A DNA stretch of 64,000 nucleotides, from positions 4,278,001 to 4,342,000 of the forward strand of contig CATNEN010000005.1 in NCBI GenBank assembly GCA_950097015.1, given 5' to 3'. The translations under genes were made by a program, and so were the position numbers. Positions 1 through 51,421 of this stretch are shown piece after piece. The DNA is from Macrostomum hystrix. Taxonomy: Eukaryota; Animalia; Platyhelminthes. The notes below the pieces were generated by a model that did no database searches, was not told the origin of the DNA, and saw nothing but the letters and a program-made list of their open reading frames with translations. Within the stretch, counting starts at the first letter, position 1. Each line of letters begins with the position of its first letter.

Positions 1-997
1 CATCACTGTTCGCATCTGTGACATTGTCAGAAGGAATTGGCTCTGGAGATGCTGGAAAAATCTATGGTTAAACTGTTAAATACTTTACTTATTTTAGTAT
101 CTATGGTCTAAACTGAATATTAAAATGCTGGTCTTGAAATAAACTGTCTAAAATTAATATTGAGTTGTCTAAATTTAACATCGGGTGTTTTGAAATAGAA
201 TGGGAAAATGTGTATCATTATTATTATTGAGGGGCGCACGCCGATTGGGTGCTGATTTTTTGTTTATTTGATGTTTGAGGCTGAACAATTCGATTTTTAA
301 AAAAGAAGACGATAGGAAAACAGTAGCATGCATAAGATTAATTTTAGGTGAATAAAATATTTGAAAGAAAACTAGTATTTAAAATAAACAAAGGCATTAA
401 AACAAAAATAAAATATTGAAATTTAAAGAGAAAATAAAACTGTGACTGAAATCACTAGACTAATGTAAAAGGTTTTAAAAAATGTAACGGATTTAGTCCG
501 AAAGCAGATTAAACTCAATAGTTAAAGGTGACTTTATTGAACCATAAATAAGTAGATTATAAGATTCCCTTGATTACTCCTTGATTAAAATTGAAATTAG
601 GGAATTTACTAACTTTAAATAACAATTTAGATGCAAGCATGAGACGCACGATTCTAACCAACCTTTAATGACCGTAGCGACAAAAAATATGCCGAATTTT
701 CTGGATAATGTTAAATTATGTTAATAAAGCAATTATCAGGTTTAAAATCAGCATATACAGATTAGGCTATAAAGACAATATGGAAACAAAATTAGTAAAA
801 GTACATATATTAAAAACTTCACGCGACGCATCAAGAGCAGCATATTCGTGTATACTCAACATTACAATTTTTGCTTACAAAACAAAAAATTCGCTTTCAG
901 GAGTAGTAAACGCTAAATAGTAGGTCAATAAATTATAAAATAGCAGGCTGCCTGAATAAAAATGTTTTTAAACAATCGACTCGAATTAGAGTTTGTT

Positions 998-3442
998 TCA
1001 GCGTGCATCAGCCACAATCTCCTGATACAATGTGACCTCACTTACAGGTCGCGAGTTCGAGCACCCAGCTCCATTCGCAGCATCAGCGCCACCATTTCGT
1101 TTGTCCTTTGGCATCATGGACAGGTAGGTACAGCTGATGCCGTCCTGAAATTAGAATTTCAACCTGAATCAGCAGAGAGTTCTTTGGAACAGAGTAAAGT
1201 ACTGCAACGAAAACTCGGCTTACATCACTGTTCGCATCTGTGACATTGTCAGAAGGAATCGGCTCTGGAGATGCTGCCGACAGCTGCTGCAATGGCACTG
1301 CCTCTTCGGATAACTCTGGCTTCACTGACTTTGCTGGAGGTGTCATTGGTGCGGCCCTCTGAAAGTTTAAAAAAATTGTGAGCTGAAGATTCAGAAGAGC
1401 TTTTATACTAGTTATTTAGAGTACCCAGATTAGGACAATCCTACCTTTCTTCGCCAAAAACATATGATGAGAACTGACAAGATGAGGGTGCAAGCAATGC
1501 TCAGTCCAAGGAAATTAATATAAATCGATCTTTTATACTCGTTGCCTTCTACAAATTTCGAACGGTGACTTACGAGTACATGTGCGTGGCTAGTGAGTGA
1601 AGCAAATCTGTACCTTTTGTTTTTGAGGAGTTCACACTCGCGTTCTCATAGATTTCAAAGTGTGAACTCGGAAAAGAAATCGTCTTAATCACACTAGACG
1701 GCAGCCAGGAAACATTCGCTTGAGCTGCAGTGCATTTCAGTGTGACAAGCGTTCCGTTTTCCCCTTGACAGCAGTTGAGGCACTTCCAGTGTGATGTCAA
1801 GGAGTCAAGGGTGGAGCTGATGAAGCTCTTATTCCATGCCTCACTCGACACTGTCAAGTTGTTCCCGAAGCTATCGAATGCACTGCACTGATGCTCTGAT
1901 TTTGGGTCTGAGCTGGAAGATAAGAAGCTGAATGTCACGTGACCTGACGGCTCTTCGCTGCAGCTCGAGTTGTCAACCGTGATTTCCAGTGTCTCTGGTG
2001 GATCTGAAAGTTAAAATGATCGAAGCTTTAAATAAACTGATAAAATATTCTTCATTATTGATCTGAGCAGCTGTACTCACACAGCACTCGCAGGTATTGA
2101 GTGCTCGCGACTTCATCTCCAACACGACAGCTGTAATTCCCAGCATGTGATGGCTGCAGGTTATGAATAAAGTGAGTCCGGTTTTTACTTCCGAGGGTCA
2201 TGTTAACACTTGGACCTGTCAGCCTGATGTGGTCTGAGAAATCAGCTGGACATCGCACATTGCACTGCACGGTAACACTCGAGTTCTGCTCTGCTGAATC
2301 GGGGAACTTCCCGCTTGATGACTGGAACTCGGCTGCAAGTTCAGATCCACGAAGTATTGTTGCTCGATGAGTAATATTTTCCGAATTTATATATACGGTA
2401 TTATTCAGTTCGGAGTAACAAACTTACTTGTCAGAACTGCTCGATTGATCCACATGTTGACAAAGTTCATGCATTGTCTTACTATGATCGTTTCATTGGT
2501 TATATATTTCCTAAGAAGAACGATTCGCACCTGAAATTTTTTAACATTTCAAAATTTAGCCTAAAGGTGACTAATGTAGGCAAATTAAAAGCATAAATGC
2601 TTTAGAAAATATTTTTGCATTCTCTTCAAATTGAAAGCAAATACGCCGTTGCTAGCTGATGTTGCAAGTAATGGTGGACAATGGTGGACATATTTTCATT
2701 ACTTTTAGTTACAGGACTTCAATGCCTCCACAATTACCTTTTGTCTTGTGCAGTTCACAGTCAGAGTCTGTCCTGATGAAACGTTGGTTGGCGTCCTTCC
2801 GCACAGCCTCCAGGTTCCGTTTTCCGCCTTCTGAAACACGGAGTTGATGTTTTTCGAGTTGCAGTGCTCCGAGCCAAAGTTCAGGTCGGCCTGCGATGTC
2901 CACACCTCAATGTCTGCTGCTCGAGCGTTCAAATTGTCTCCGTAGCTCGTATGTTCATTTTTAACTAATGCTAACAAAATTAGGAGAAATTAGGATTTTG
3001 AATGACAGGATTTAAAATAGCAACTAGAAAATCACTGGTCAGAATTAAGTGCTCACTTCTTGCTTTCATGGACACAGAGCTGATGTTCTCAAACTGCTTC
3101 AGTTTTATCACAAACCAATGAAACCCGGCATCAGTGCTTTCGTTGCCCTCCATGGAGTGAAGAAATGGCCAGTTGCCAACTTCATCAGCTGAGCGACTCG
3201 AGAAGCAAGTAGATATACTATTTTCTTGAATAAAGCTGGACGACTGCCACGATTCTTTTATAAGACTTCTTCGGACTTCAAGTTTGCCTGAAGGTCGTTG
3301 TGAAACATGTCATGGTTTTAGCGTTTACAGAAGCTGAACACGCATTTTGGTTTTCTAACTCACAGTTATCCGCGACACATGGACGCAAAACGATGAATCC
3401 GCAGACAGCTAGGCCGATGCAAAAAACTACTCGACTGTCCAT
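998..3442 (-). CDS. Receptor R1: signal peptide + F-lectin/discoidin-like domain + Ig domain + Cys-rich domain + TM + tyrosine-motif tail (about 565 aa, 9 exons)
   Basis: Hand-spliced exons 3442-3364, 3287-3057, 2964-2738, 2530-2428, 2362-2081, 2003-1614, 1548-1445, 1358-1224, 1144-998, all GT-AG with consistent phases. Signal peptide MDSRVVFCIGLAVCGFIVLRPCVA. Motifs WQSSSF, FLHS, GFHWFVIKL, RAADIEVW, FGSEHC. Ig: VTVQC...LQPSHAGNYSC. TM: FLGLSIACTLILSVLIICFW-RRK. Tail: CTYLSM and VTLYQEIVADAR-stop. Confidence 0.85.
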
Positions 3443-23368: not shown

Positions 23369-23791
23369 AATTTAACTATTATTGCACCGTTCGACTATGA
23401 TAAAGGCTGGGCAGTTGTACATGCACGCGCTTAATATATTGCTTTATCGACAATATGATCACTCCATAGAAGTTTAATTTAAATCATGAAAAATGAAGAC
23501 GCCAGTGATAATAAAAGTGAAAAAAGTATCAGTTTTGTCACACTCGAGTCTTTTATAAGCCATGAGGTTATTTTGCCGATCCGTCAGAAATAATCTCAAG
23601 ATATACTGTGAGCTCGCTGTTTGTTTGACTGCTGATGGATGGTTCGTACTTGACGTGCTGTATCACCGTGTCGTAGCAACACTCGCTGTTGTTCGGATTC
23701 TGAAAGTACAGCAATCAACAAGCAATATTTGTTACGTTACATTTTTGTGTCCTTTAGCTAGACACAGCTACATAGCTCGTATATTGCATCT

Positions 23792-25553
23792 TCAATAATA
23801 CAAATTTGTATATACTGGAAGCCTTTCATCTTTGAGTACTTTACTCACCAGAAAATTTGAAGAGCTCCCGTCAATATCCTGTAGGGATTGCTGAGAGTGC
23901 GACAAAGCTTGGGTGCGGATGTCTGGTGGCAGCCAAGGCTTCTGCGGCACCTCTCTATTCAGGACAGTCAGTTGATGGCCAGAATTGGATTCTTCCGTAG
24001 ATCTCTGTAAGCAGATTTTCTGCAGATTTATTAATGGTCGAGTTTGATTAAAAGAAAACGTTATGAAAAAATGATATTGAATATTGATATTTTTGCTTGC
24101 TTGCCTTTCTGCCAAACATCAAGAGACTTGCTGCGAGTACAATAATCACTAAGGCAGCGATGCAAATCGAAGCCAGCACCAATGCTGAAAAAATGAGTTG
24201 CTATGGTAAGTGATGCACAAATTTAGGTAAAATTAAGAACAAACTTAACAACTGAGACTATCTTTAGTTGGAAGTGATTGCTTACAAAAGCCAGTGCTTT
24301 TAGGGCAGCTTCTGTCAACAAAAATAGATTTCTCGATCTTGTAACTAGTTCCGCCATTCACTGTGCATTTGACTGTCATGTTAAGAAAACGGCTGCAGTT
24401 TTCACATAGCCACGAAGATCTCAGCAAGTTTCTATGGAGGTCGCAGGTTGGTCTGTTCTTAATTAGCAACTGAACATTTTCGCCGTTTAAATCGTAGGCT
24501 GTGCAAGCGTGTTCTGAAGTATCTGGTGATTCGAAGAAAAATGTAATATCGTCACTGGGTTGACGTCGGTTGCAAATCCCTTTTTCAGCTTTGATTGTTA
24601 ATTGACTTGTCGAGTCTGCAATAAAATAAATATTTTCATCAAAAAAGCAACCAGGAGACAAGCAGTGTGCATGATATTAACAAACGGAATAAAAAGTCGC
24701 GTACCTGTTATATCAATTTGATTCAACCAAATGTCCACAAAATTCATACACCTATCCGTTTCTTTACTGTTGCCTGCAGTAACATTCTTTCTTAGCAACA
24801 ACATACGAACCTAGAAGAAATGTATCTTTGATAACAGATTATCATTTTAATGTAGACCGATAAATTATAAGAAGTTTTACGCACCTCTTGATCACATTTG
24901 ACCGTCAAGTACCTTTCTTCAATCTTAGAAAACTGAGTTTTTCCACAGTAGTGCCACATTTTTGGGTTATACTGTGAACTTACACTAGCTGAGCAGTGTT
25001 CGGATCCAAAGTTTTGATACAGTTTTGATGAGAACACTTCGATATCGGCTGCTCGATATTGAACGTTGGATTCTGGAAGGTAATTGTCGATAACACCTAC
25101 CTAATCGGGCCAGATGTCGTTCCACCTGTTGTTCTTATTAGTGTAATAACGTAACAAAAAACTCACCAGATCTACTTTTGACTGTCACAGACTTGATTTT
25201 TTCAGTCTTATTAAGTGCTATGATAAACCAGTGGTAACCCTTATCAGCAAATTTATTATTAGTTTCAGAATGGAAAAATTTAAAACTGTTGACATTGTTG
25301 GCTGAATGCGCTTTAAAGCAGGTTTCTTTTTTAGTGTGTGCTAAATACTGCGATGTCTGCCATGAGTCTGCTATATAGTTTGATGTGACGTTTAATCCAC
25401 CTGCAAGGCGCGAAGTTAATTTTTTACTGGTTCAATAAAATATTTTTTGGTCATAAAGCGTTTCAACTCACATTTTCCTTTTTTAAGCTCGCTCAAAATG
25501 GCGCTTCGACATGTGGCAAGCAATGTGCAGAAGATAATTCCAAAGATTTGCAT
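23792..25553 (-). CDS. Receptor R4: signal peptide + lectin-like + Cys-rich + TM + tail, no Ig exon (about 415 aa, 7 exons)
   Basis: Exons 25553-25472, 25400-25167, 25072-24885, 24810-24705, 24615-24286, 24184-24105, 24019-23792. Motifs WQTSQY, FFHS, DKGYHWFII, RAADIEVF, FGSEHC, LLLRK...CMNFVDIW. TM: LVLASICIAALVIIVLAASLLMF-GRK with a GC donor. The tail end (VYTNLYY-stop) may be spliced differently. Confidence 0.78.
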
Positions 25554-29459: not shown

Positions 29460-31155
29460 TCAATTAGAGCCATTAGCACCATTACCATCAGCGACAATTT
29501 CTGTATAGAGGGTCCACTCACTCGGTGGTCGCTCCGAATCCAGACTGAGATCACTTTGAGCTGACTTAACAACTTCGTAGCTGCATTCAGCCTGCTGACT
29601 GAGACTTGGATTATAATTTGAATCGCTCAATTGCAGGCAAACCTGAGGCTTAACACTCTGGACTTCAAGTTCGTTGAGCTCCTGAGGAGTTGAAAAACTT
29701 TCTGCTCCTTCGTAAAATTGGCTTGCAGTGTTCTGAAAACCATTTATACATTGTCCTCTCGAGCGCTGAAATGTTTAGACTAATGCTTCGTTTTACTTTG
29801 TCAAAGTTTGTCTATAAAACTTAGAAAATAGAGATTTTACCAGCTTGAAAGTGCAGATGCCGACAGCAACAGCACAAGCAACAGCAGTGAGTATGAGCAG
29901 CATTGGTAAAATTGCTGTTGCACTAAACACAGACTTTTTAGAGGCTTAAATGTTTATAAAATAAACGACTTTACATAAAAATCTTAAATAAGAAATTTAA
30001 AGTTCAAGGACAACAAATGCGAATCTTACGACAAATCAGAGAATTAAAAAATGTTCGATTTGTTACATCATGTGACGCCGTACACGATAATGTCAATGAT
30101 GAATATGTGCCGCTGCAATTTAAGCAAAACCAAACCGACTTCAGTACATTTGCCACTGGATCACAGGTCAGGTCGTCAATCGTATTTTGTTTAAACAAAT
30201 TCATCCGGTAGCCATTCTCGTCTGTGGCGTAGCACTCGTGCTGGGGTGCAGGATTTGAGTCCGAAGATTCGAAACCGAATGTCAGATTAGAAGCTTGCTG
30301 ATCTACGCAGATATTCTCATCAACAGATATTTTCAGCTTTTGCGTCGGATCTGAAATTTATGAATCGTGTTTAAAATTATTTGTTTCCTTATATTATCAT
30401 GTTTTGATAGCATATAGCTTTGCTACTCACTCGATACACTGACAGTGCTAATCCACATGTTGACGAAGCTCATACACTGCTTACGCTCATCGCTAACATT
30501 GCTGACGTTCTTTCTAAGCAGAATCATTGTACTCACGACCGGCTAAGTTAATAGTTATTTGGCTATTCATTAATGACTCAAATTGTAGATCATTGAGCTC
30601 TAAGAGGGCAATCTTTTACCTTTACCTGGTGGCAGTTGACAATCAGTGTTTCGTTGGACTTCACTGTCGGCTTAGTCCTGCCGCACATGCTCCAATTGCT
30701 CATGGTTTCGTAAAACTTTTTGCTAATTGCTGTTGAGTTGCAGTGCTCCGAACCGAATTCATAGTCGTTTTGCGTAGTCCATATTTCAATGTCAGCTGCT
30801 CGACTGTTAAGTACGTCCGTCAGATTATCCTTTTTTTCGTATTCTGAAACATCTAAAAAAATCATGAGAGTTTTTATCATGAAAATTGAAAATATACTTA
30901 AAAGTACTTTAGATCGGAAAAATTGGCATGTTTAATAATTACCTCTATTTTTTATCGATACAGATGCAACTACTTGACTCTGGTTTAACTTGATCACTAA
31001 CCAATGATGTCCATCGTCTAGATATGTACTCCCTTCACCCGAATGGAAGTATCTGTATGTATTTTTCTGACCAAAAGAAGAATTGAAGCAATAGTGAAAA
31101 CGAGTTGACGACTGCCAAGAATGCTTAAACGAGCGGTTGTCGATGCTCAGGCTAC
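29460..31155 (-). CDS. Receptor R5: lectin-like + Cys-rich + TM + tail with ITSM-like motif (first exon unresolved)
   Basis: Exons 31155-30943, 30852-30620, 30542-30431, 30350-30030, 29944-29841 (104 bp TM), 29765-29460, with consistent phases. Motifs WQSST, YFHS, DDGHHWLVIKL, KNRD, RAADIEIW, FGSEHC, ILLRK...CMSFVNMW. Tail has SYEVV and RPPSEWTLYTEIVADG. Confidence 0.78.
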
Positions 31156-33139: not shown

Positions 33140-34860
33140 GCTACTTCTGATAGTCCAGTTCTATCAGATATTCCAGTACAATCTGATAATAATCCAGCAC
33201 TCTCTGATAATCCAGCACTATCTGATAATTCAGCACTCTGATAATCCAGCACTATCTGATAATTCAGCACTATCTGATAATTCAGCAGTGCTATCTCATA
33301 ATTCAACACTCTGATAATCCAGCACTCTCTGATAATCCAACACTATCTGATAATCTAACACTCTCTGATAATCCATCACTCTCTGATAATTCAGCACTAT
33401 CTGATAATTCAGCAGTGCTATCTGATAATTCAACACTCTGATAATCCAGCACTCTCTGATAATCCAACACTCTCTGATAATCTAACACTCTCTGATAATT
33501 CACCACTCTCTGATAATTCACCACTCTCTGATAATTCAGCACTCCCTGATTATCCAGCAATCTCTGATAATCCAGCAATCTCTGATAATCCAACACTTTC
33601 TGATAATCCAACACTCTCATAATCCAGCACTCCCTGATTATCCAGCAATCTCTGATAATCCTAAACTCTCTGATAGTCCTACACTCTGATAATCCAGCAC
33701 TCTCTGATAATCCTACACTCTCTGATAATTCAGCACTCTGATAATCCAGCACTCTCTGATAATCCAACACTCTGATAATCCACCACTCTCTGATAATTCA
33801 GCACTCTCTGACAATCCAGCACTCCCTGATTATCCAGCAATCTCTGATAATCCAGCAATCTCTGATAATCCAACACTCTCTGATAATCCAACACTCTCTG
33901 ATAATCCAGCACTCCCTGATTATCCAGCAATCTCTGATAATCCTACACTCTCTGATAATCCTACACTCTCTGATAATTCAGCACTCTCTGACAATCCAGC
34001 ACTCCCTGATTATCCATCACTCTCTGATAATCCAACAATCTCTGATAATCCAACACTCTCTGATAATCCAACACTCTCAGATAATCCAACACTCTCTGAT
34101 AATCCTACACTCTCTGATTATCCAGCAATCTCTGATAATCCAACACTCTCTGATAATCCTACACTCTGATAATCATACACTCTGATAATCCTACACTCTC
34201 TGATAATCCAGCACTCTCTGATAATCCAGCAATCTCTGATAATCCAACACTCTCTGATAATCCTACACTCTGATAATCCTACACTCTCTGATAATCCTAC
34301 ACTCTCTGATTATCCAGCAATCTCTGATAATCCAACACTCTCTGATAATCCTACACTCTGATAATCCTACACTCTGATAATCCTACACTCTCTGATAATC
34401 CAGCACTCTCTGATAATCCAGCAATCTCTGATAATCCAACACTCTCTGATAATCCTACACTCTGATAATCCTACACTCTCTGATAATCCTACACTCTCTG
34501 ATTATCCAGCAATCTCTGATAATCCAACACTCTCTGATAATCCTACACTCTGATAATCCTACACTCTCTGATAATCCTACACTCTCTGATAATCCAGCAC
34601 TCCCTGATTATCCAGCAATCTCTGATAATCCAACAATCTCTGATAATCCTACACTCTGATAATCCTACACTCTGATAATCCTACACTCTCTGATTATCCA
34701 GCAATCTCTGATAATCCAACACTCTCTGATAATCCTACACTCTCTGATAATCCAACACTCTCTGATAATTCAGCATTCTGACAATCCAGCACTCTCTGAT
34801 AATCCAGCAATCTCTGATAATCCTACACTATCTGATAATCCAGCACTATTTGATAATCCA
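33140..34860. repeat. Minisatellite of about 1.7 kb, 18-bp (and 16-bp) unit ATAATCCAACACTCTCTG
   Basis: Direct tandem repetition. The minus-strand ORFs are QRVLDY repeats. Confidence 0.95.
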
Positions 34861-35888
34861 GTAGCTATAGTGCGCTGTGATTAAAAGAAAGTTAAAGAGA
34901 ATAAAGGCATTTTCCGTTAGGAATTTAATGATTTGTAAGGCAGAAACAGATCTCAACATGTTGTTTAGTTATAGTGTTTTGTTTTATATTACGATTGAAA
35001 AAAGGTAGGCAAAAAAATGTTTAATGAAATCGAACTGGTTATGAGCGTTTAAAGCTTGCGTGATTCAAGATTGAACATGCTAGATTCTTCAAACACGACT
35101 CACTCCCTAGTCTTCTCAATAACTCACTCCTCAGTCTCCTCAATAACTCACTCCCGTCACCTCAGTCATACCTATGTTTTCTTCCCATGTCATATGTCAC
35201 AGTGAGTCCAGGTCTAGGTGCTGTGCTGGCAGGTGAGCAGGCTGAACTGCTGGGCTTCATTATATGCCACCTTGTGAATTGCAGTCTGTTGATTCATCCA
35301 TTTCTGGAGGAAGCAGTTGGAGCCGAAAAGTGACTTGAAGAGCAGCATGGAATCGGAGCCCTGCTTCAACACGGCCAGATGGACTAATGTGTCTTTTAGT
35401 AGAAATTCAAGCGTGGAGTGCTGGACTCATTCATAGCAGCTTGGTGAACTATGGTACATTTGAATACCCCTTTGTGGTAGAAGCAGCAGATGAGTATCAC
35501 CATCAGGGTCAGTGTATGAGGGCTTTGAAGTAGGCCTAGCAAATACGGTTGGGCAACATCCAAGTGACATGATGAGCGAGTGACTTTTCAAATCAAAAAG
35601 GCGGTGGGGTGGTTTTTTAGTCCACCAACTGGTACAGATGCAGCAGGCATTTCTAGTCTCATACTTTAATGGTGGTTCTGAGCTCAAAGGAGGTACGCAG
35701 CAGCATTGTGCTTGGAAATAGAGGCAACTGAAAGTAAAAAAGTTTTTGCTTGTTAGTTTAATATTTATCTATGTAATCTATCTCAGTTTAGTTGAGGGGT
35801 TTGTGCACCCAGCCAGACAACTCACTAAGTTAGGGGGCTGTGTGAAGTTGCACCACTTTTTTGTATCTCTCTAGGCCCCTGTTTACTA

Positions 35889-43025: not shown

Positions 43026-45102
43026 AATCATGTGCAGAGCTAAAACGAATTCGTGAAGACGGCGTTCGAGACAGCGAGCGAGTTGTTGACCTGTGGTGCG
43101 ACTGCATATCTAGCTACACTAATAGGCTTGGAGATGAGAGTAAGTTGCTTCTTCTATTTTCATTCTTTCCGCTGTATACTTATATGTTTATATTGAGATC
43201 TGGTTCAGTTCGACTATGATTTATTTCAGTCAGGTTGTCATTAAGTTCAGTCAGGTTGTCATTAAGTTCAGTCAGGTTGTCATCAAGTTCAGTCAGGTTG
43301 TCATTAAGTTCAGTCAGGTTGTCATTAAGTTCAGTCAGGTTGTCATTAAGTTCAGTCAGGTTGTCATCAAGTTCAGTCAGGTTGTCATTAAGTTCAGTCA
43401 GGTTGTCATTAAGTTCAGTCAGGTTGTCATTAAGTTCAGTCAGGTTGTCATCAAGTTCAGTCAGTTTGTCATTAAGTTCAGTCAGGTTTGTCATTAAGCT
43501 CAGTCAGGTTGTCATTAAGTTCAGTCAGGTTGTCATTAAGTTCAGTCAGGTTGTCATTAAGTTCAGTCAGGTTGTCATTCACAGGGTGTGAACCCTGTGA
43601 ATAGCATTTTACAGTTTAAATTGTCAATTTCCATATTGCAGAGTGGGCCTTATACGAGCAGGTGTTTATCTCGGCACTGGACTGCGGCAGATTAGAAGCC
43701 GCAGATGCCTGCCTGCTGCAGCTCACTCGGCAGTTTCCAAATAGTCAACGAATTAAACGGTACGAAGCTATGAGACTGGAGGCCGAGGACAGCCTCGAAG
43801 CCGCGGCTGACATCTACAAGCAGATGGCCGAGGCTGACAAATTGGACTCGCTGTCGCGCAAAAGATTAGTGGCCGTACTCAAAGCCAGAGGTCGCAACGC
43901 CGAGGCGATTAAAGAGCTAACTGGATATTTAAAGGTAAATTTGCTTCAAATTTATTCGAAGTTATAGACAAGATAAACAATGAGAGTAACCATTACGCTT
44001 TTAAAACGCCTAGGTATCTAAACAGTGTTGTTGAAAACCTTGTTCGTTCATTCGATAGTGTCATCTCTCCCATGTCTCATCTCGTCCGTGTCTCATCTCA
44101 CCATAGTCTCATATCTCCCGTGTCTCATCTCACCATAGTCTCATATCTCCCGTGTCTTATCTCTCCAGTTTAAGAATATCTCTACTGTGTCTCATCTCTC
44201 ACGTGTCTCTACTCTCCTATGTCTAATCCCTCCCCTGTCTCATCTCTATTGTGTTTCATCTATCCAGTGCTTCATCTCTCCCGTGTCTTATCTCTCCCGT
44301 GTCTCATCTCTCCCATGTCTCACCTGTCCCATGTCTTATCTCTCCCGTGTCTCATCTCTCCCGTGTCTCATCTCTCCCGTGTCTCATCTATCCTGTGTAT
44401 CATATCTACCCCTGTCTAATTTCTCCCGTGTCTCATCTCTCCCGTCTCATCTCTCCCATGTCTAATCTCCCCCGTGTCCCGTGCAAATGTACACACCTGT
44501 GTGTGTCCAGTGTTGGCTTGGGGTCCAGTGTCACCAAATGATGTACCATTGCCTGCAACTTGTTACTATCTTTTTAGGATTTCTGCACCGATTTCGAAGC
44601 CTGGCTGGAACTATCCGAGCTCTACATGAACGAAGGCGATTATAAGAAGGCCGCCTTCTGCATGGAGGAGCTAATATTGAGCAATCCGCATCACCATCTG
44701 TATCATCAGCGCTACGCCGAAATCAAATACACTGACGGCAGTCCTGAGTCTATGGAGCTGGCCAAGAGCTATTTTGCACAGGCTGTTCGCTTGAATCCTA
44801 ACAATATGCGCGCTCTCTACGGCCTCCTATTGGCTGCTGGCAACTGCGCCAACGCCGGCACAAAGTCGTCCGCTTCGTCCACGGCCAAGTCAAGAAAGGA
44901 GAGTGCTAGATTAGCACAATGGGCAGCTGCCAGGATTGCAGAGCGTTACAAAGCTGCGTCTGCTTCTAGTAGGGATGCGAAATCCGCTAGCAGCGATATG
45001 GCCAAACTGGCACTGCAGTTGAGTCTGTGCTGTTCCACTGGCGACGGCGGCTCGCAGCAGCAGCAGCAGCAAACAGGTGCAAGCAGTCCGCCAATGATTT
45101 GA
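43026..45102 (+). CDS. EMC2: ER membrane protein complex subunit 2 (TPR protein, TTC35); first short exon not located
   Basis: Exons about 43026-43139, 43642-43934, 44578-45102 with consistent phases. [75 protein letters not shown] and [12 protein letters not shown] match known EMC2 sequence. Confidence 0.93.
43222..43578. repeat. 21-bp tandem repeat (CATTAAGTTCAGTCAGGTTGT) in an EMC2 intron
   Basis: About 17 near-identical direct copies with no spacers. Confidence 0.95.
44060..44480. repeat. Degenerate 16-bp minisatellite (GTGTCTCATCTCTCCC) in an EMC2 intron
   Basis: Same unit as inside the 32370 MITE and in the 45.2-46.0 kb array. Confidence 0.9.
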
Positions 45103-45204
45103 ATGCTAGATTGATTATTCAAGTCTACTCTATTGATCTTTTATTTATGTACTTGCTGGATACCAGCTTGAAGGTATACAAATGAACCCTGTGTACTTCC
45201 GGTT

Positions 45205-45965
45205 GAGAGGCTACCCCTGTCTTATCTCTTCAGTGTTTCATGCTTTCTCTGCCTCTTATCTCTCCCTCCCCGTCTCATCTCTCCCGCGTCTTATCTCTCC
45301 CGTGTCTCATCTCTCCCGTGTATTATCTCTCCCGCGTCTTATCTCTCCCGTGTCTCATCTCTCCCGTGTATTATCTCTCCCGCGTCTCATCTCTCCATGT
45401 CTCACTTCTCCCGTGTCTCATCCCTCCCGTGTCTCATCTCTCCCGTATCTCATCTCTCCCGCGTCTCATCTCTCCCGCGTCTCATCTCTCCCGCGTCTCA
45501 TCTCTCCCGTGTCTTATCTCTCCCCGTCTTATCTCTCCCGTATCTCATCTCTCCCGCGTCTCATCTCTCCCGCGTCTCATCTCTCCCGCGTCTCATCTCT
45601 CCCGTGTCTTATCTCTCCCCGTCTTATCTCTCCCGTGTCTCATCTCTCCCGCGTCTCATCTCTCCATGTCTCACTTCTCCCGTGTCTCATCCCTCCCGTG
45701 TCTCATCTCTCCCGTATCTCATCTCTCCCGCGTCTCATCTCTCCCGCGTCTCATCTCTCCCGCGTCTCATCTCTCCCGTGTCTTATCTCTCCCGCGTCTC
45801 ATCTCTCCCGTGTCTCATCTCTCCCGCGTCTCATCTCTCCCGCGTCTCATCTCTCCCGCGTCTCATCTCTCCCGCGTCTCATCTCTCCCGTGTCTTATCT
45901 CTCCCCGTCTTATCTCTCCCGTGTCTCATCTCTCCCGTGTCTCATCTCTCCCGTCTCTCATCTCT
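45205..45965. repeat. 16-bp minisatellite downstream of EMC2
   Basis: Tandem GT/CGTCTCATCTCTCCC units, which produce the SRVSSLPRLISPASHL ORFs in three frames. Confidence 0.95.
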
Positions 45966-46346
45966 GCCAAAGTATGGTCGCAACTTACGCTCGTAATTCA
46001 AAGTTTAAACGATCAATCTAGTATCTACAGGGACTTTAAAGACTCGTTTAAACTACTCAGTCTGGATGAAGTAGTTTAGATAGTAAATTCTTTTTATTAT
46101 AAATCGGTTTCTTTCTATTTATGGGATTTTTCAAATGTGTCAATGTTGTACTCTTGTGAATGGATTGGTTGACATTTCTGCTACAAGTCCTACAAGTACA
46201 AGTACTGCTTCAGCAAATTCACCAACTGAATTCACCTCCTCATTGGGTCTTCCCAGGCCGCAATCTGTTTGCTAATCATCGGCATGATGCTTCGCCACGT
46301 TCATCTTTTTGCTTCTATGGCTTTTTTATTACCTGTCATATCCCTT

Positions 46347-46730: not shown

Positions 46731-47179
46731 ATCTCCCACACAGCTACCCTCTATCTATCCGTAGCAAGCTATCTAATGCATATTTTTCGATGCACTGCTC
46801 GTAGGTTTGTTTGGCTTTCATAAATTTTGATCGCTAATTAATTTTCAGATTTTTTAAAATCGTCTATTTACTCTTAACATAGTTTTTTCAGTGCTGGTAA
46901 ATAACAAAATGATTTACATCTGGTTGTTTTATTGCTTCATTGTTCTATGGTACTCTGATTGTCATGCTATTAAATCAACTGTTGTGTTTAGTTTTGTTTT
47001 AAATAAGTTCAGCACATGAAAATAAATAAAGATAAAATATGCCCTACCACATTTCTAGATTTTCTGTGTGGCCTGATTGAATCGTGCTACATTTTATGCA
47101 TCACTTTCATTGACAATCTTTCTACTATGAGTAGAGTACGTTTGCAAACTCATGAGCTACAGTAAACTGTTAGAAGGAG

Positions 47180-50100
47180 AGGAGAGTAGGGTGGAGGGAA
47201 GGAGAGTAGGGTGGAGGGAAGGAGAGTAGGGTGGAGGGAAGGAGAGTAGGGTGAAGGAATGGAGAGTGGGGTGAAGGGATGGGGAGTAGGGTGAAGGGAG
47301 GGAGAGTAGGGTGAAGGGATGGAGAGTAGGGTGAAGGGATGGAGAGTAGGGTGGAGAGAAGGAGAGTAGGGTGAAGGAATGGAGAGTAGGGTGGAGGGAA
47401 GGAGAGTAGGGTGAAGGAATGGAGAGTAGTGTGAAGGGATGGAGAGTAGGGTGAAGGGAGGGAGAGTAGGGTGAAGGGAGGGAGAGTAGTGTGAAGGGAA
47501 GGAGAGTAGGGTGAAGGGAAGGTGAGTAGGGTGAAGGGATGGAGAGTAGGGTGAAGGGATGTAGACTAGGGTGAAGGGAGGGAGAGTAGTGTGAAGGGAG
47601 GGATAATAGGGTGGAAGGAAGGAGAGTAGGGTGAAGGAATGGAGAGTAGGGTGGAGGGAAGGAGAGTAGGGTGGAGGGAAGGAGAGTAGGGTGAAGGAAT
47701 GGAGAGTAGGGTGGAGGGAAGGAGAGTAGGGTGGAGGGAAGGAGAGTAGGGTGAAGGGAAGGAGAGTAGTGTGAAGGGATGGAGAGTAGTGTGAAGGGAT
47801 GGAGAGTAGGGTGAAGGGATGGAGAGTAGAGTGAAGGGATGGAGAGTAGGGTGAAGGGAGGGAGAGTAGGGTGAAGGGAGGGAGAGTGGGGTGAAGGAAT
47901 GGAGAGTAGGGTGGAGGGAAGGAGAGTAGGGTGAAGGAATGGAGAGTAGTGTGAAGGGAAGGAGAGTAGTGTGAAGGGAAGGAGAGTAGGGTGAAGGAAT
48001 GGAGAGTAGGGTGGAGGGAAGGAGAGTAGGGTGGAGGGAAGGAGAGTAGGGTGAAGGGAAGGAGAGTAGTGTGAAGGGATGGAGAGTAGTGTGAAGGGAT
48101 GGAGAGTAGGGTGAAGGGATGGAGAGTAGAGTGAAGGGATGGAGAGTAGGGTGAAGGGAGGGAGAGTAGGGTGAAGGGAGGGAGAGTGGGGTGAAGGAAT
48201 GGAGAGTAGGGTGGAGGGAAGGAGAGTAGGGTGAAGGAATGGAGAGTAGGGTGGAGGGAAGGAGAGTAGTGTGAAGGGAAGGAGAGTAGGGTGGAGGGAA
48301 GGAGAGTAGGGTGAAGGGAAGGAGAGTAGGGTGAAGGGATGGAGAGTAGGGTGAAGGGAGGGAGAGTAGGGTGAAGGGAAGGAGAGTAGTGTGAAGGGAA
48401 GGAGAGTAGTGTGAAGGGAGGGATAGTAGGGTGAAGGGAAGGTGAGTAGGGTGAAAAGAAGGAGAGTGGGGTGAAAGAATGGAGAGTAGGGTGAAGGGAA
48501 GGTGAGTAGTGTGAAAAGAAGGAGAGTAGGGTGAAAGAATGGAGAGTAGGGTGAAGGGAGGGATAATAGGGTGAAGGGAAGGAGAGTAGGATGAAGGGAA
48601 GGTGAGTAGTGTGAAAAGAAGGAGAGTAGTGTGAAGGGATGGAGAGTAGGGTGAAGGGATGGAGAGTAGTGTGAAGGGAAGGAGAGTAGTGTGAAGGGAT
48701 GGAGAGTAGGGTGAAGGGATGGAGAGTAGTGTGAAGGGAAGGTGAGTAGGGTGAAGGGAAGGAGAGTAGAGTGAAGGGAAGGTGAGTAGGGTGAAGGGAG
48801 GGAGAGTAGGGTGAAGGGAAGGTGAGTAGTGTGAAAAGAAGGAGAGTAGGGTGAAGGGATGGAGAGTAGTGTGAAGGGAAGGTGAGTAGGGTGAAGGGAA
48901 GGAGAGTAGAGTGAAGGGAAGGTGAGTAGGGTGAAGGGAGGGAGAGTAGGGTGAAGGGAAGGTGAGTAGTGTGAAAAGAAGGAGAGTAGGGTGAAGGGAT
49001 GGAGAGTAGTGTGAAGGGAAGGTGAGTAGGGTGAAGGGAAGGAGAGTAGAGTGAAGGGAAGGTGAGTAGGGTGAAGGGAGGGAGAGTAGGGTGAAGGGAA
49101 GGTGAGTAGTGTGAAAAGAAGGAGAGTAGGGTGAAGGGATGGAGAGTAGTGTGAAGGGAAGGTGAGTAGGGTGAAGGGAAGGAGAGTAGAGTGAAGGGAA
49201 GGTGAGTAGGGTGAAGGGAGGGAGAGTAGGGTGAAGGGAAGGTGAGTAGTGTGAAAAGAAGGAGAGTGGGGTGAAGGGATGGAGAGTAGGGTGAAGGGAT
49301 GGAGAGTAGTGTGAAGGGAAGGTGAGTAGGGTGAAGGGAAGGAGAGTAGAGTGAAGGGAAGGTGAGTAGGGTGAAGGGAGGGAGAGTAGGGTGAAGGGAA
49401 GGTGAGTAGTGTGAAAAGAAGGAGAGTAGGGTGAAGGGAAGGTGAGTAGTGTGAAAAGAAGGAGAGTAGGGTGAAGGGATGGAGAGTAGTGTGAAGGGAA
49501 GGTGAGTAGGGTGAAGGGAAGGAGAGTAGAGTGAAGGGAAGGTGAGTAGGGTGAAGGGAGGGAGAGTAGGGTGAAGGGAAGGTGAGTAGTGTGAAAAGAA
49601 GGAGAGTAGGGTGAAGGGATGGAGAGTAGTGTGAAGGGAAGGTGAGTAGGGTGAAGGGAAGGAGAGTAGAGTGAAGGGAAGGTGAGTAGGGTGAAGGGAG
49701 GGAGAGTAGGGTGAAGGGAAGGTGAGTAGTGTGAAAAGAAGGAGAGTGGGGTGAAGGGATGGAGAGTAGGGTGAAGGGATGGAGAGTAGTGTGAAGGGAA
49801 GGTGAGTAGGGTGAAGGGAAGGAGAGTAGAGTGAAGGGAAGGTGAGTAGGGTGAAGGGAGGGAGAGTAGGGTGAAGGGAAGGTGAGTAGTGTGAAAAGAA
49901 GGAGAGTGGGGTGAAGGGATGGAGAGTAGGGTGAAGGGATGGAGAGTAGTGTGAAGGGAAGGTGAGTAGGGTGAAGGGAAGGAGAGTAGAGTGAAGGGAA
50001 GGTGAGTAGGGTGAAGGGAGGGAGAGTAGGGTGAAGGGAAGGTGAGTAGTGTGAAAAGAAGGAGAGTAGGGTGAAGGGATGGAGAGTAGTGTGAAGGGAA

Positions 50101-50400
50101 GGTGAGTAGGGTGAAGGGAAGGAGAGTAGAGTGAAGGGAAGGTGAGTAGGGTGAAGGGAGGGAGAGTAGGGTGAAGGGAAGGTGAGTAGTGTGAAAAGAA
50201 GGAGAGTGGGGTGAAGGGATGGAGAGTAGGGTGAAGGGATGGAGAGTAGTGTGAAGGGAAGGTGAGTAGGGTGAAGGGAAGGAGAGTAGAGTGAAGGGAA
50301 GGTGAGTAGGGTGAAGGGAGGGAGAGTAGGGTGAAGGGAAGGTGAGTAGTGTGAAAAGAAGGAGAGTGGGGTGAAAGAATGGAGATTATGGTGAAGGTAA
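47180..50400. repeat. Purine-rich 20-bp satellite of about 3.2 kb (GGAGAGTAGGGTGAAGGGAA) with higher-order structure
   Basis: About 160 monomers in exact 20-bp register, a 300-bp block duplication (47701 vs 48001), and 140/160-bp higher-order units from about 48720. Confidence 0.97.
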
Positions 50401-51421
50401 GGGGAGTTGGGTGATGGGAAAATGTTTGGGATAGAGGAAAGATTATTGTTAAGCGAAGGAGAGTGTTACTAAGGGAAGGAGTGTATAGTTATGAAAGGAG
50501 AGAATGGGTCAGGGGTAGAATAGCATGGTAAAAGAATATAAAGTAAAGCAGAAGCGGGCATTGATTCAGAAAGTGTTTGTAGTCAAGTGAAAGCAGTTGT
50601 TTCTACTATGATGAACAGAATCCATATGCTATCTTTATGACGCCGCTTCAAAGAACACACCAGTAGCCAGTAGCCAGTCAGCCAGCCCAGTGAAGCGGGC
50701 TAGCTAAGTCTAATTAATAATTAAGGTCTTATGCAAAATACCTTATGCAAGACCGTTGCAAATCCAACAGACTTCTCCCTACTTATATAGTGGCCATTGG
50801 GACGACTGAGATTTGGGAAGAAAATGTACTTTTCTATTTATAAGCGTTCCATGTTATCAGTGTGCGGCAATCGACAAGTTTTTTCGAGGCATTGCTTATT
50901 GTTATAGAGGAAGAAAATCAGATCGATAAAATAGTTTCGGCATGGGATTACAGAACCTGCAGGTGCTTACAACCGCCTTATCACCTTTGAGAGTTATTTT
51001 TTCACTGCGGAATGCCTTCTCATTATCTTTTATGACCATGTATATTTTATCTGAAAGAGGCGAAATTTCTTGTCAGATCAACCCTCTCTGTCTGTCTTGT
51101 CATCTCTGTCTACATGAGGCTAGTGTGAAGTGTTGATATATATACTTTTTGGCCTACTAGGGATTATCAGAGATAAGCCAAGCATTTGGTCGCTTCCTAT
51201 AGATTCTGTGTCGCTGCTTAGAAGAACAATTTTATATTGAGTATCGATTATTTTTGTAAGAGTTCTGGGAAATCTTGTGGCATTGCGCGTTCTAGCCACG
51301 GAGCTGTGAATATGAGAGCCTAGTGAGGCTACTCCTTGCCAAACAGACATTTTCTAGGCGTCATTTTCGATATTTTTTCATTTGCAGAAGCATGTGTCTC
51401 TCTGCTGTTGCTAATTGATCT

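What the first reader, a model, noticed from the sequence alone, without database searches (positions are those of the whole stretch)
998..1144. Conserved ITSM-like tail motif shared by R1 and R5
Seen: R1 ends RPVSEVTLYQEIVADAR and R5 has RPPSEWTLYTEIVADG. Both fit TxYxxI, and this is the only conserved block in otherwise unrelated tails. R1 also has YLSM (YxxM) and R5 has YEVV. Known: TxYxxI/V is the ITSM consensus that recruits SH2 proteins such as SHP-2 and SAP, and YxxM binds PI3K p85. Inference: inhibitory or switch-type signalling.
Basis: partly seen in the sequence, partly recalled or inferred. Interest (0 to 1): 0.7.

Follow-up and report, generated by a model that had tools for sequence, protein, structure and literature searches.

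The report
Conserved two-tyrosine receptor tail cassette
The shared tail block is real: it is the last exon of a large family of flatworm (Macrostomum) surface receptors and carries two tyrosine-centred motifs laid out like the phosphatase-docking tails of vertebrate inhibitory immune receptors, but many family members have phenylalanine instead of the second tyrosine, so its mode of action is still open.

Summary
R1 (998-1144, minus strand) and R5 (29460-29594) share RPxSExTLYxEIVAD.

In about 290 kb of this genome I found 16 such tail exons on three contigs. Macrostomum lignano proteins end in the same cassette, so it is a family feature.

The cassette has two motifs, with the two aromatic residues 24-33 residues apart. 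The proximal motif is ECxYxx[V/L/M], with Cys and Tyr invariant. The distal motif is S[D/E]xTx[Y/F]xEI..D, ending 6-14 residues before the stop. Conserved residues use several synonymous codons, so selection acts on the protein. Canonical splice sites put R1 and R4 in the motif frame.

The layout resembles the Siglec and CEACAM1 ITIM + ITSM tails. The genome encodes an SH2-SH2-phosphatase (SHP type) and SH2 tyrosine kinases.

Caveats:
- The distal Tyr is Phe in 5 of 16 copies here and in 3 of 5 M. lignano lineages. No other residue replaces it.
- The proximal -2 residue is Cys, which is outside the ITIM consensus.
- YxxM is limited to one subclade.

The scan has already noted this tail type elsewhere in this genome (s1-332696, s1-278231, s1-408116).

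The parts
998..1144 (-). R1 terminal exon (48 codons plus TGA at 998-1000) encoding the whole two-motif cassette
   Evidence: Acceptor AG at 1146-1145. The phase-0 donor at 1223 and the 79-nt intron put the exon in the motif frame, whereas the read-through frame stops at 1083. Profile score 75.9 bits.
1115..1132 (-). R1 proximal motif C-T-Y-L-S-M (CxYxx[V/L/M]; Tyr codon 1124-1126)
   Evidence: Cys and Tyr are invariant in 16 of 16 copies here and in all M. lignano relatives.
1007..1042 (-). R1 distal motif S-E-V-T-L-Y-Q-E-I-V-A-D (TxYxEI; Tyr codon 1025-1027)
   Evidence: Thr is invariant and uses 4 codons; Ile is invariant and uses 3 codons; Glu in 13 of 16; Tyr 11 and Phe 5.
1145..1223 (-). 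R1 last intron (GTAAGC...TTTCAG, 79 nt)
   Evidence: Read from the sequence.
1224..1358 (-). R1 penultimate cytoplasmic exon (45 codons, no similarity to R5)
1445..1548 (-). R1 transmembrane exon (...INFLGLSIACTLILSVLIICFWRRK)
   Evidence: Basic residues after the hydrophobic span place the tail in the cytoplasm (inference).
23568..23699 (-).
   Evidence: (54.9 bits). All three junctions are phase 0.
29460..29594 (-). R5 cassette (QAECSYEVV...SEWTLYTEIVADGNGANGSN*; stop 29460-29462). Proximal motif 29568-29585, distal motif 29487-29522.
   Evidence: 49.1 bits.
29595..29642 (-). R5 candidate 48-nt in-frame intron. Spliced or retained, the frame and both motifs are kept.
   Evidence: Read. Untested by RNA.
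1..54 (-). Upstream end of a 269-bp decaying copy of R1's 3' end. Its tail exon (...SDVTFYQVIMADGL*) lies just outside the window at C5:4277779-4277922.
   Evidence: 95% identity; 8 nonsynonymous to 1 synonymous change; differences are spread evenly over exon and intron.

Best explanation
The block belongs to a discrete terminal-exon signalling cassette. The cassette is shared by many members of a Macrostomum-specific family of single-pass receptors with a fucolectin-like head, Ig-like domains, a transmembrane span and a cytoplasmic tail.

It carries two motifs whose aromatic residues lie 24-33 residues apart: a proximal ECxYxx[V/L/M] with an invariant tyrosine, and a distal S[D/E]xTx[Y/F]xEI..D close to the C-terminus.

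The most likely mechanism is as follows. After ligand binding, a cytosolic SH2 tyrosine kinase phosphorylates the tyrosines. The two sites together then dock SH2 proteins, most plausibly the tandem-SH2 SHP/Corkscrew-type phosphatase encoded on contig C1. That would give an inhibitory or modulatory signal, as in Siglec, CEACAM1 or PD-1-type ITIM + ITSM tails. Copies with Phe at the distal site would be single-site variants with altered output.

Shown here: the exon, its frame, its conservation within and between species, the layout, and the presence of candidate partners. Inferred: phosphorylation, the partner and the sign of the signal.
For: - Both motifs are present in R1, R4 and R5.
- There are 16 cassette exons on contigs C5, C8 and C39, clearly separated from background.
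- Conserved residues are encoded by several synonymous codons. The recent pair L012/L013 differs by 2 synonymous and 0 nonsynonymous changes. The dead partial copy next to R1 shows 8 nonsynonymous to 1 synonymous change.
- Canonical phase-0 splice sites give the motif frame in R1 and R4.
- The full-length M. lignano proteins A0A1I8H6B9 and PAA Mlig012084g1 run signal peptide, head, transmembrane span, then ...ECSYLSV...DCTVYLEIVADAN at the C-terminus. The cassette is again the last exon in the genomic record.
- Layout and wording are close to Siglec-5/-9 (LHYASL ... TEYSEI, 23 residues apart) and mouse CEACAM1 (27 apart) (PMC2722167, PMC7226588, PMC13358205). Copies here read TEYTEI and TEYIEI.
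- C1:10615034-10616578 holds SH2-SH2-PTP in one 549-residue open frame. At least 8 SH2 domains lie next to tyrosine-kinase domains.
- Near-identical C8 genes carry different tail exons, as in paired receptor families.
Against: - The distal Tyr is Phe in 5 of 16 copies here and in 3 of 5 M. lignano lineages, with Thr, Glu, Ile and Asp around it still conserved. Only Phe ever replaces it. This points to a need for the aromatic ring rather than the phosphate.
- The proximal -2 residue is an invariant Cys, which is outside the ITIM consensus.
- Short tyrosine consensus matches are common by chance: 114 in this window.
Confidence: 0.5

Rival explanations
1. The distal motif is a docking or sorting motif that works without phosphorylation. 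An aromatic residue (Tyr or Phe) and the Ile at +3 insert into hydrophobic pockets of a partner that is not an SH2 domain, or that binds as SAP binds unphosphorylated SLAM. Only the proximal tyrosine, if any, is regulated by phosphorylation.
For: Tyr and Phe interchange in both species while Thr(-2), Glu(+2), Ile(+3) and Asp(+6) stay conserved. None of the other single-nucleotide neighbours of a Tyr codon (His, Asn, Asp, Ser, Cys) is ever seen. Genes with the Phe form look intact and constrained.
Against: An invariant Thr at -2 with Ile at +3 is the specific signature of SH2-binding switch motifs (PMC2722167, PMC13358205). The motif is always paired, at SHP-like spacing, with an invariant tyrosine. 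I could name no alternative reader domain from these data.
Confidence: 0.3
2. One or both motifs are YxxPhi endocytic or sorting signals read by clathrin adaptor mu subunits, so they control surface level or trafficking rather than signalling.
For: Both motifs fit Yxx[bulky hydrophobic] (YLSM, YEVV, YQEI, YTEI) and lie in an apparently unstructured tail.
Against: From general knowledge, adaptor binding tolerates Phe poorly. It also does not explain the invariant Cys or Thr at -2, the conserved Glu at +2, or the acidic Ser-Asp stretch in front of the distal motif.
Confidence: 0.1
3. In R1 or R5 the motif is not translated. The GTAAGT donor at 1045 or the GT at 29642 is used with a far acceptor, or the genes are dead. 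On this reading the similarity is a relic.
For: A dead partial copy of the R1 tail lies 1.2 kb downstream. R5 lacks the Ig exon that R1 has.
Against: The codons after 1045 are conserved at protein level with synonymous changes across 16 paralogs and in M. lignano. GTAAGT is not conserved (GTCAGT in L003 and L004). The 29642 donor has in-frame acceptors 48 or 51 nt downstream. The neutral copy shows how quickly the motif decays without selection.
Confidence: 0.05

Closest known systems
CD33-related Siglec tails (Siglec-5/-9: proximal ITIM LHYASL, distal ITSM-like TEYSEI) and mouse CEACAM1 (VAYTVL / TVYSEV)
   Same: A type-I lectin or Ig receptor with two tyrosine motifs 23-27 residues apart (24-33 here). 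The distal motif is TxYxE[I/V] near the C-terminus; copies here read TEYTEI, TEYIEI, TVYLEI and TLYQEI. Family members with other tails exist alongside (PMC2722167, PMC7226588, PMC13358205).
   Different: No sequence homology. The head is fucolectin-like rather than a sialic-acid-binding V-set domain. The proximal -2 residue is an invariant Cys. The distal Tyr is often Phe. No functional data exist.
SLAM-family ITSM (TxYxx[V/I]) read by SAP/EAT-2
   Same: An exact consensus match with invariant Thr(-2) and Ile(+3).
   Different: From my own knowledge, SAP-type adaptors are known from vertebrates only; none was sought here. SLAM tails carry several ITSMs, not a CxY plus TxY pair.
Invertebrate receptor families with ITIM/ITAM-type tails: Hydractinia Alr genes and Botryllus FcoR genes
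   Same: Lineage-specific, tandemly clustered, fast-evolving IgSF receptor families. Their tails carry tyrosine motifs, sometimes swapped between near-identical genes or splice forms, and SHP, Syk and Src homologues are present in the genome (PMC9546547, PMC12582321).
   Different: A different phylum and different ectodomains. Here a single conserved two-motif cassette exon is shared across contigs and species, with a Tyr/Phe dimorphism that those papers do not report.

Membership tests
ITSM (immunoreceptor tyrosine-based switch motif) | Sequence TxYxx[V/I] | tested here: met
   R1 TLYQEI, R5 TLYTEI, R4 TVYLEI. Thr and Ile are invariant in 16 of 16 copies.
ITSM (immunoreceptor tyrosine-based switch motif) | Located in the cytoplasmic tail of a single-pass surface receptor | tested here: met
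   A transmembrane exon followed by basic residues lies upstream in R1, R4 and R5. M. lignano P0001 and P0013 are full-length, running signal peptide, head, transmembrane span and tail. Topology is inferred, not measured.
ITSM (immunoreceptor tyrosine-based switch motif) | A phosphorylatable tyrosine kept across relatives | tested here: inconclusive
   Tyr is present in R1, R4 and R5. Family-wide the count is Tyr 11 and Phe 5 here, and Phe in 3 of 5 M. lignano lineages.
ITSM (immunoreceptor tyrosine-based switch motif) | Phosphorylation-dependent binding of SAP/EAT-2, SHP-1/2 or SHIP SH2 domains | not testable with these tools
   Only the presence of candidates could be checked. An SH2-SH2-PTP open frame lies at C1:10615034-10616578. 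A SAP-type protein was not sought.
ITIM ([S/I/V/L]xYxx[I/V/L]) | Ser, Ile, Val or Leu at -2 of the proximal tyrosine | tested here: not met
   The -2 residue is Cys in 16 of 16 copies and in all M. lignano relatives. Consensus as given in PMC9546547 and PMC13358205.
ITIM ([S/I/V/L]xYxx[I/V/L]) | Ile, Val or Leu at +3 | tested here: inconclusive
   Val or Leu in 10 of 16 copies (R5 YEVV, R4 YDTV). Met in 6 of 16, including R1 YLSM.
YxxM (PI3K p85 SH2 site) | Met at +3 of a phosphorylated tyrosine, conserved among relatives | tested here: inconclusive
   Present in R1 and in its C5 subclade (YLSM, YFSM, YSVM; 6 of 16). Absent from R4, R5, the C8 and C39 copies and M. lignano.
ITAM (Yxx[L/I]x6-9Yxx[L/I]) | Two YxxL/I sites 6-9 residues apart | tested here: not met
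   The two aromatic positions are 24-33 residues apart.
Siglec/CEACAM1/PD-1-type tandem ITIM + ITSM tail (by layout, not descent) | A proximal tyrosine motif, then about 20-30 residues later a distal TxYxx[V/I] near the C-terminus | tested here: met
   Spacing is 24-33, and the distal aromatic residue lies 6-14 residues from the stop. Siglec-9 has Y433/Y456 and mouse CEACAM1 has Y454/Y481 (PMC7226588).

The most novel reading that the evidence does not exclude
The cassette is a new kind of bipartite tail module in which the distal TxΦxEI site works as an aromatic docking site. In this reading its Tyr and Phe forms, together with the alternative EYENSEYKLE-type tail exon, split one flatworm lectin-Ig family into receptor classes with different signalling on near-identical ectodomains. 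That would be a paired-receptor system that arose independently of the vertebrate, cnidarian and tunicate ones.
Probability: 0.25. Interest if true: 0.7.

Novelty: new variant of a known kind. Interest (0 to 1): 0.5.

Why it matters
If the cassette recruits an SHP-type phosphatase, a free-living flatworm has built a Siglec-like receptor system from unrelated parts: a lectin head, an Ig stalk and an ITIM/ITSM-like tail, with sister genes carrying other tails. That would add a lophotrochozoan case to the recurring, convergent use of tyrosine-motif signalling in fast-evolving recognition receptors.

Macrostomum lignano has RNAi and transgenesis (from my own knowledge), so the ligand, the partner and the role (immunity, self/non-self or mate recognition) could be tested directly. 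The natural Tyr/Phe series amounts to a ready-made mutagenesis panel for asking whether the distal site needs phosphorylation.

Tried and rejected
- Pfam on the tail exon found nothing. The Ig exon gives only weak Ig hits, and P0001 gives a sub-threshold F5/8-type-C hit.
- Own-genome searches with single tails are insensitive: 1-4 hits each. I went through the conserved head exon instead.
The family census is therefore incomplete.
- A word search with an alignment of M. lignano tails added no new members.
- Profile hits P0003 (WHEP-repeat tRNA synthetase...TLYQEIQ...), P0008 and P0009 are repeats and chance matches.
- The idea that the partial copy of the R1 tail is under diversifying selection was rejected: its differences are spread evenly over exon and intron.
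- ITAM and strict ITIM readings were rejected on spacing and on the -2 residue.
- An LC3-interacting-region reading was considered, from my own recall of that consensus only. The invariant Thr at -2 and Val/Leu at -1 fit it poorly.
All searches were exon by exon, by reference.

Full report
**What is there.** The window is intron-bearing eukaryotic DNA, G000 contig C5:4278001-4342000. Its receptor genes' closest relatives in the protein libraries are all from Macrostomum lignano. An earlier scan note (s1-332733) also calls the genome a Macrostomum-type flatworm.

On the minus strand, 998-1144 translates to DGISCTYLSMMPKDKRNGGADAANGAGCSNSRPVSEVTLYQEIVADAR*. The stretch 29460-29600 translates to ...QQAECSYEVVKSAQSDLSLDSERPPSEWTLYTEIVADGNGANGSN*.

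**Gene models.**
- R1: the transmembrane exon is 1445-1548 and ends ...CFWRRK. It is followed by a 45-codon cytoplasmic exon at 1224-1358.
- The R1 donor GT at 1223 is phase 0 and the acceptor AG is at 1146-1145. The 79-nt intron is not a multiple of three. Only the spliced product is in the motif frame; the read-through frame stops at 1083.
That exon reads NPNNSECCYDTVIQHVKYEPSISSQTNSELTVYLEIISDGSAK*. All its junctions are phase 0, and one donor appears to be GC rather than GT.
- R5: the motifs lie in an open frame that continues from the exon starting at 29765. The GT at 29642 has acceptors 48 or 51 nt downstream, both in frame. Splicing there or retaining the intron keeps both motifs.
Every search used single exons by reference.

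**More than chance, and more than two genes.**
- A six-frame count finds 114 matches to [ST]xYxx[IVL] in the window, so the consensus match alone is worthless.
- The R1 tail finds R5 at E = 0.002.
- The own-genome search found further copies on C5, C8 and C39.
- The conserved head exon has at least 56 matches in the genome.
- In about 290 kb that I could fetch there are 40 head exons and 16 tail exons of this type. A profile scores those 16 at 49-77 bits, against 7.2 bits for the best unrelated segment.
- In the window, R1, R4 and R5 carry the cassette. R2 has no detectable one, and R3 is a fragment.

**Anatomy of the cassette.**
- Proximal motif: [E/N/S]-C-x-Y-x-x-[V/L/M]. Cys and Tyr are invariant.
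- Distal motif: S-[D/E]-x-T-x-[Y/F]-x-E-I-[V]-[A]-D. Thr and Ile are invariant, Glu is present in 13 of 16 copies, and Asp in 13 of 16.
- The two aromatic positions are 24-33 residues apart. The distal one lies 6-14 residues from the stop.
- The linker and everything upstream are unalignable.

**Selection acts on the protein.**
- Thr is written with all four codons, Ile with three, and Tyr, Glu and Asp with two each.
- The young pair L012/L013 differs by two synonymous and no nonsynonymous changes.
- A 269-bp partial copy of R1's 3' end lies 1.2 kb downstream and runs into window 1-54. Its differences are spread evenly over exon and intron, with 8 nonsynonymous to 1 synonymous change, and it has already lost Glu(+2) and Val(+4). 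It shows what the motif looks like without constraint.
- The GTAAGT at 1045 is GTCAGT in L003 and L004. It is therefore a by-product of the Val-Ser codons, not a conserved donor.

**Other species.** The tail profile, run against 1.8 billion representative proteins, returns nine hits. Six are M. lignano proteins; the other three are repeats or chance matches.
- A0A1I8H6B9 (328 aa) and PAA Mlig012084g1 (339 aa) are full-length. They run signal peptide, head, transmembrane span, then ...EPECSYLSV...DCTVYLEIVADAN at the very C-terminus.
- In the genomic record the cassette is again the last exon.
- Other M. lignano members end ...ECSYLTV...CTEFIEMVADGD, ...CSYLTV...CTEFLEIVADGD and ...ECSYLTI...CTEFIEILADGE.

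**The Tyr/Phe point.** The distal aromatic residue is Tyr in 11 and Phe in 5 of the 16 copies here. The Phe copies fall in two separate groups, on C5 and on C8. It is Phe in three of five M. lignano lineages. No other residue occurs there, although a Tyr codon has five other single-step neighbours. The residues around Phe stay conserved, and the genes concerned look intact. By contrast, the proximal Tyr is never replaced.

It is why I give a phosphorylation-independent docking role a 0.3 chance.

**Comparison with known motifs.**
- ITSM is TxYxx[V/I] and ITIM is [I/V/L/S]xYxx[L/V/I] (PMC13358205, PMC9546547).
- Siglec-5/-9 carry a proximal LHYASL and a distal TEYSEI (PMC2722167).
- Siglec-9 has Y433/Y456 and mouse CEACAM1 has VAYTVL Y454 / TVYSEV Y481 (PMC7226588). 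That is a spacing of 23-27, against 24-33 here.
- Several flatworm copies read TEYTEI or TEYIEI, one residue away from the Siglec motif.
- The layout is therefore Siglec-like. The resemblance is convergent, because no homology is detectable and the head is a different lectin.
- The proximal motif fails the strict ITIM consensus because of its invariant Cys at -2.
- YxxM is limited to R1's C5 subclade (6 of 16 copies).
- ITAM spacing is not met.

**Candidate partners exist.**
- C1:10615034-10616578 has SH2, SH2 and a tyrosine-phosphatase domain in one 549-residue open frame. A second such arrangement lies on C11.
- At least eight SH2 domains lie next to tyrosine-kinase domains. A tandem-SH2 kinase (Syk/Shark-like) lies on C7.

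**Context.**
- The family also has a second conserved tail...EYENSEYKLE.ATG[V/I]Y.., found here on C8 and in M. lignano P0014-16. It also has short-tailed members.
- Two C8 genes are 92-93% identical from their 5' ends to about 50 bp past the transmembrane exon. They then carry different tail exons. This is the pattern of paired receptor families, also described for Hydractinia Alr and Botryllus FcoR genes (PMC9546547, PMC12582321).
- I found no paper on Macrostomum with ITIM, or on transmembrane F-type lectins in flatworms.

**Limits.**
I made no further attempt, so expression and splicing of R1, R4 and R5 rest on sequence logic and on M. lignano gene models.
- Earlier scan notes report that the homologous terminal exon at C5:3.505 Mb, and another on a different contig, are spliced into mRNA (s1-332696, s1-278231). 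I did not verify that.
- About 20 family members on C38 could not be fetched.

**Verdict.** The finding is a real, conserved, family-wide cytoplasmic cassette. It is a new variant of the known kind, tyrosine-motif tails of clustered recognition receptors. An SHP-type docking function is likely but unproven, and the natural Tyr/Phe dimorphism remains unexplained.

Noticed in passing
window 1-54 and C5:4277786-4278054 (L024:9786-10000): A 269-bp, 95% identical copy of window 1008-1276 (part of R1's cytoplasmic exon, the intron and the tail exon) lies 1.2 kb downstream of R1. It evolves neutrally and reads ...TFYQVIMADGL*.
   Followed up: yes
window 24105-24115 (minus strand): R4's transmembrane exon appears to end with a GC donor (AAG|GCAAGC) at the position where R1 has AAG|GTAGGA. 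This is a possible GC-AG intron.
   Followed up: partly
C8:3213826-3213951 (+), C8:3162371-3162532 (-); M. lignano P0014-P0016: The same receptor family has a second conserved tail class with three tyrosines: ...EYENSEYKLE.ATG[V/I]Y... at the C-terminus. It includes a YxN site.
   Followed up: partly
C8:3210547-3213291 versus C8:3219656-3222399 (L025, L022, L026): Two neighbouring genes are 92-93% identical up to about 50 bp past the transmembrane exon and then unrelated. One has the EYENSEY-type tail exon and the other has the CxY...TxYxEI exon. This is a paired-receptor-like arrangement.
   Followed up: partly
about C8:3222770-3224500 and C8:3226300-3227750 (L022, L026): The C8 cassette exon at 3224509-3224703 sits between two long arrays of a 37-bp satellite. 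The tail at C8:3208814 has a similar left flank, so the exon may have moved together with the satellite.
   Followed up: no
C5:3514111-3514833 and C5:3559014-3559658 (L038, L040): Some family members have a stalk and transmembrane open frame that stops right after the membrane span (...AVILSKVNIMLRN*). These are short-tailed paralogs.
   Followed up: no
window 47173-50515, also 33146-34861 and 44058-45968: Long tandem-repeat arrays. The 48-50 kb stretch has a GC skew of 1.0, meaning no C on the plus strand.
   Followed up: no
G000 C1:10615034-10616578 (-) and C7:10945907-10952488 (-): There is an SH2-SH2-tyrosine phosphatase in one 549-residue open frame (SHP/Corkscrew type). There is also a tandem-SH2 plus tyrosine-kinase locus (Syk/Shark type).
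   Followed up: partly
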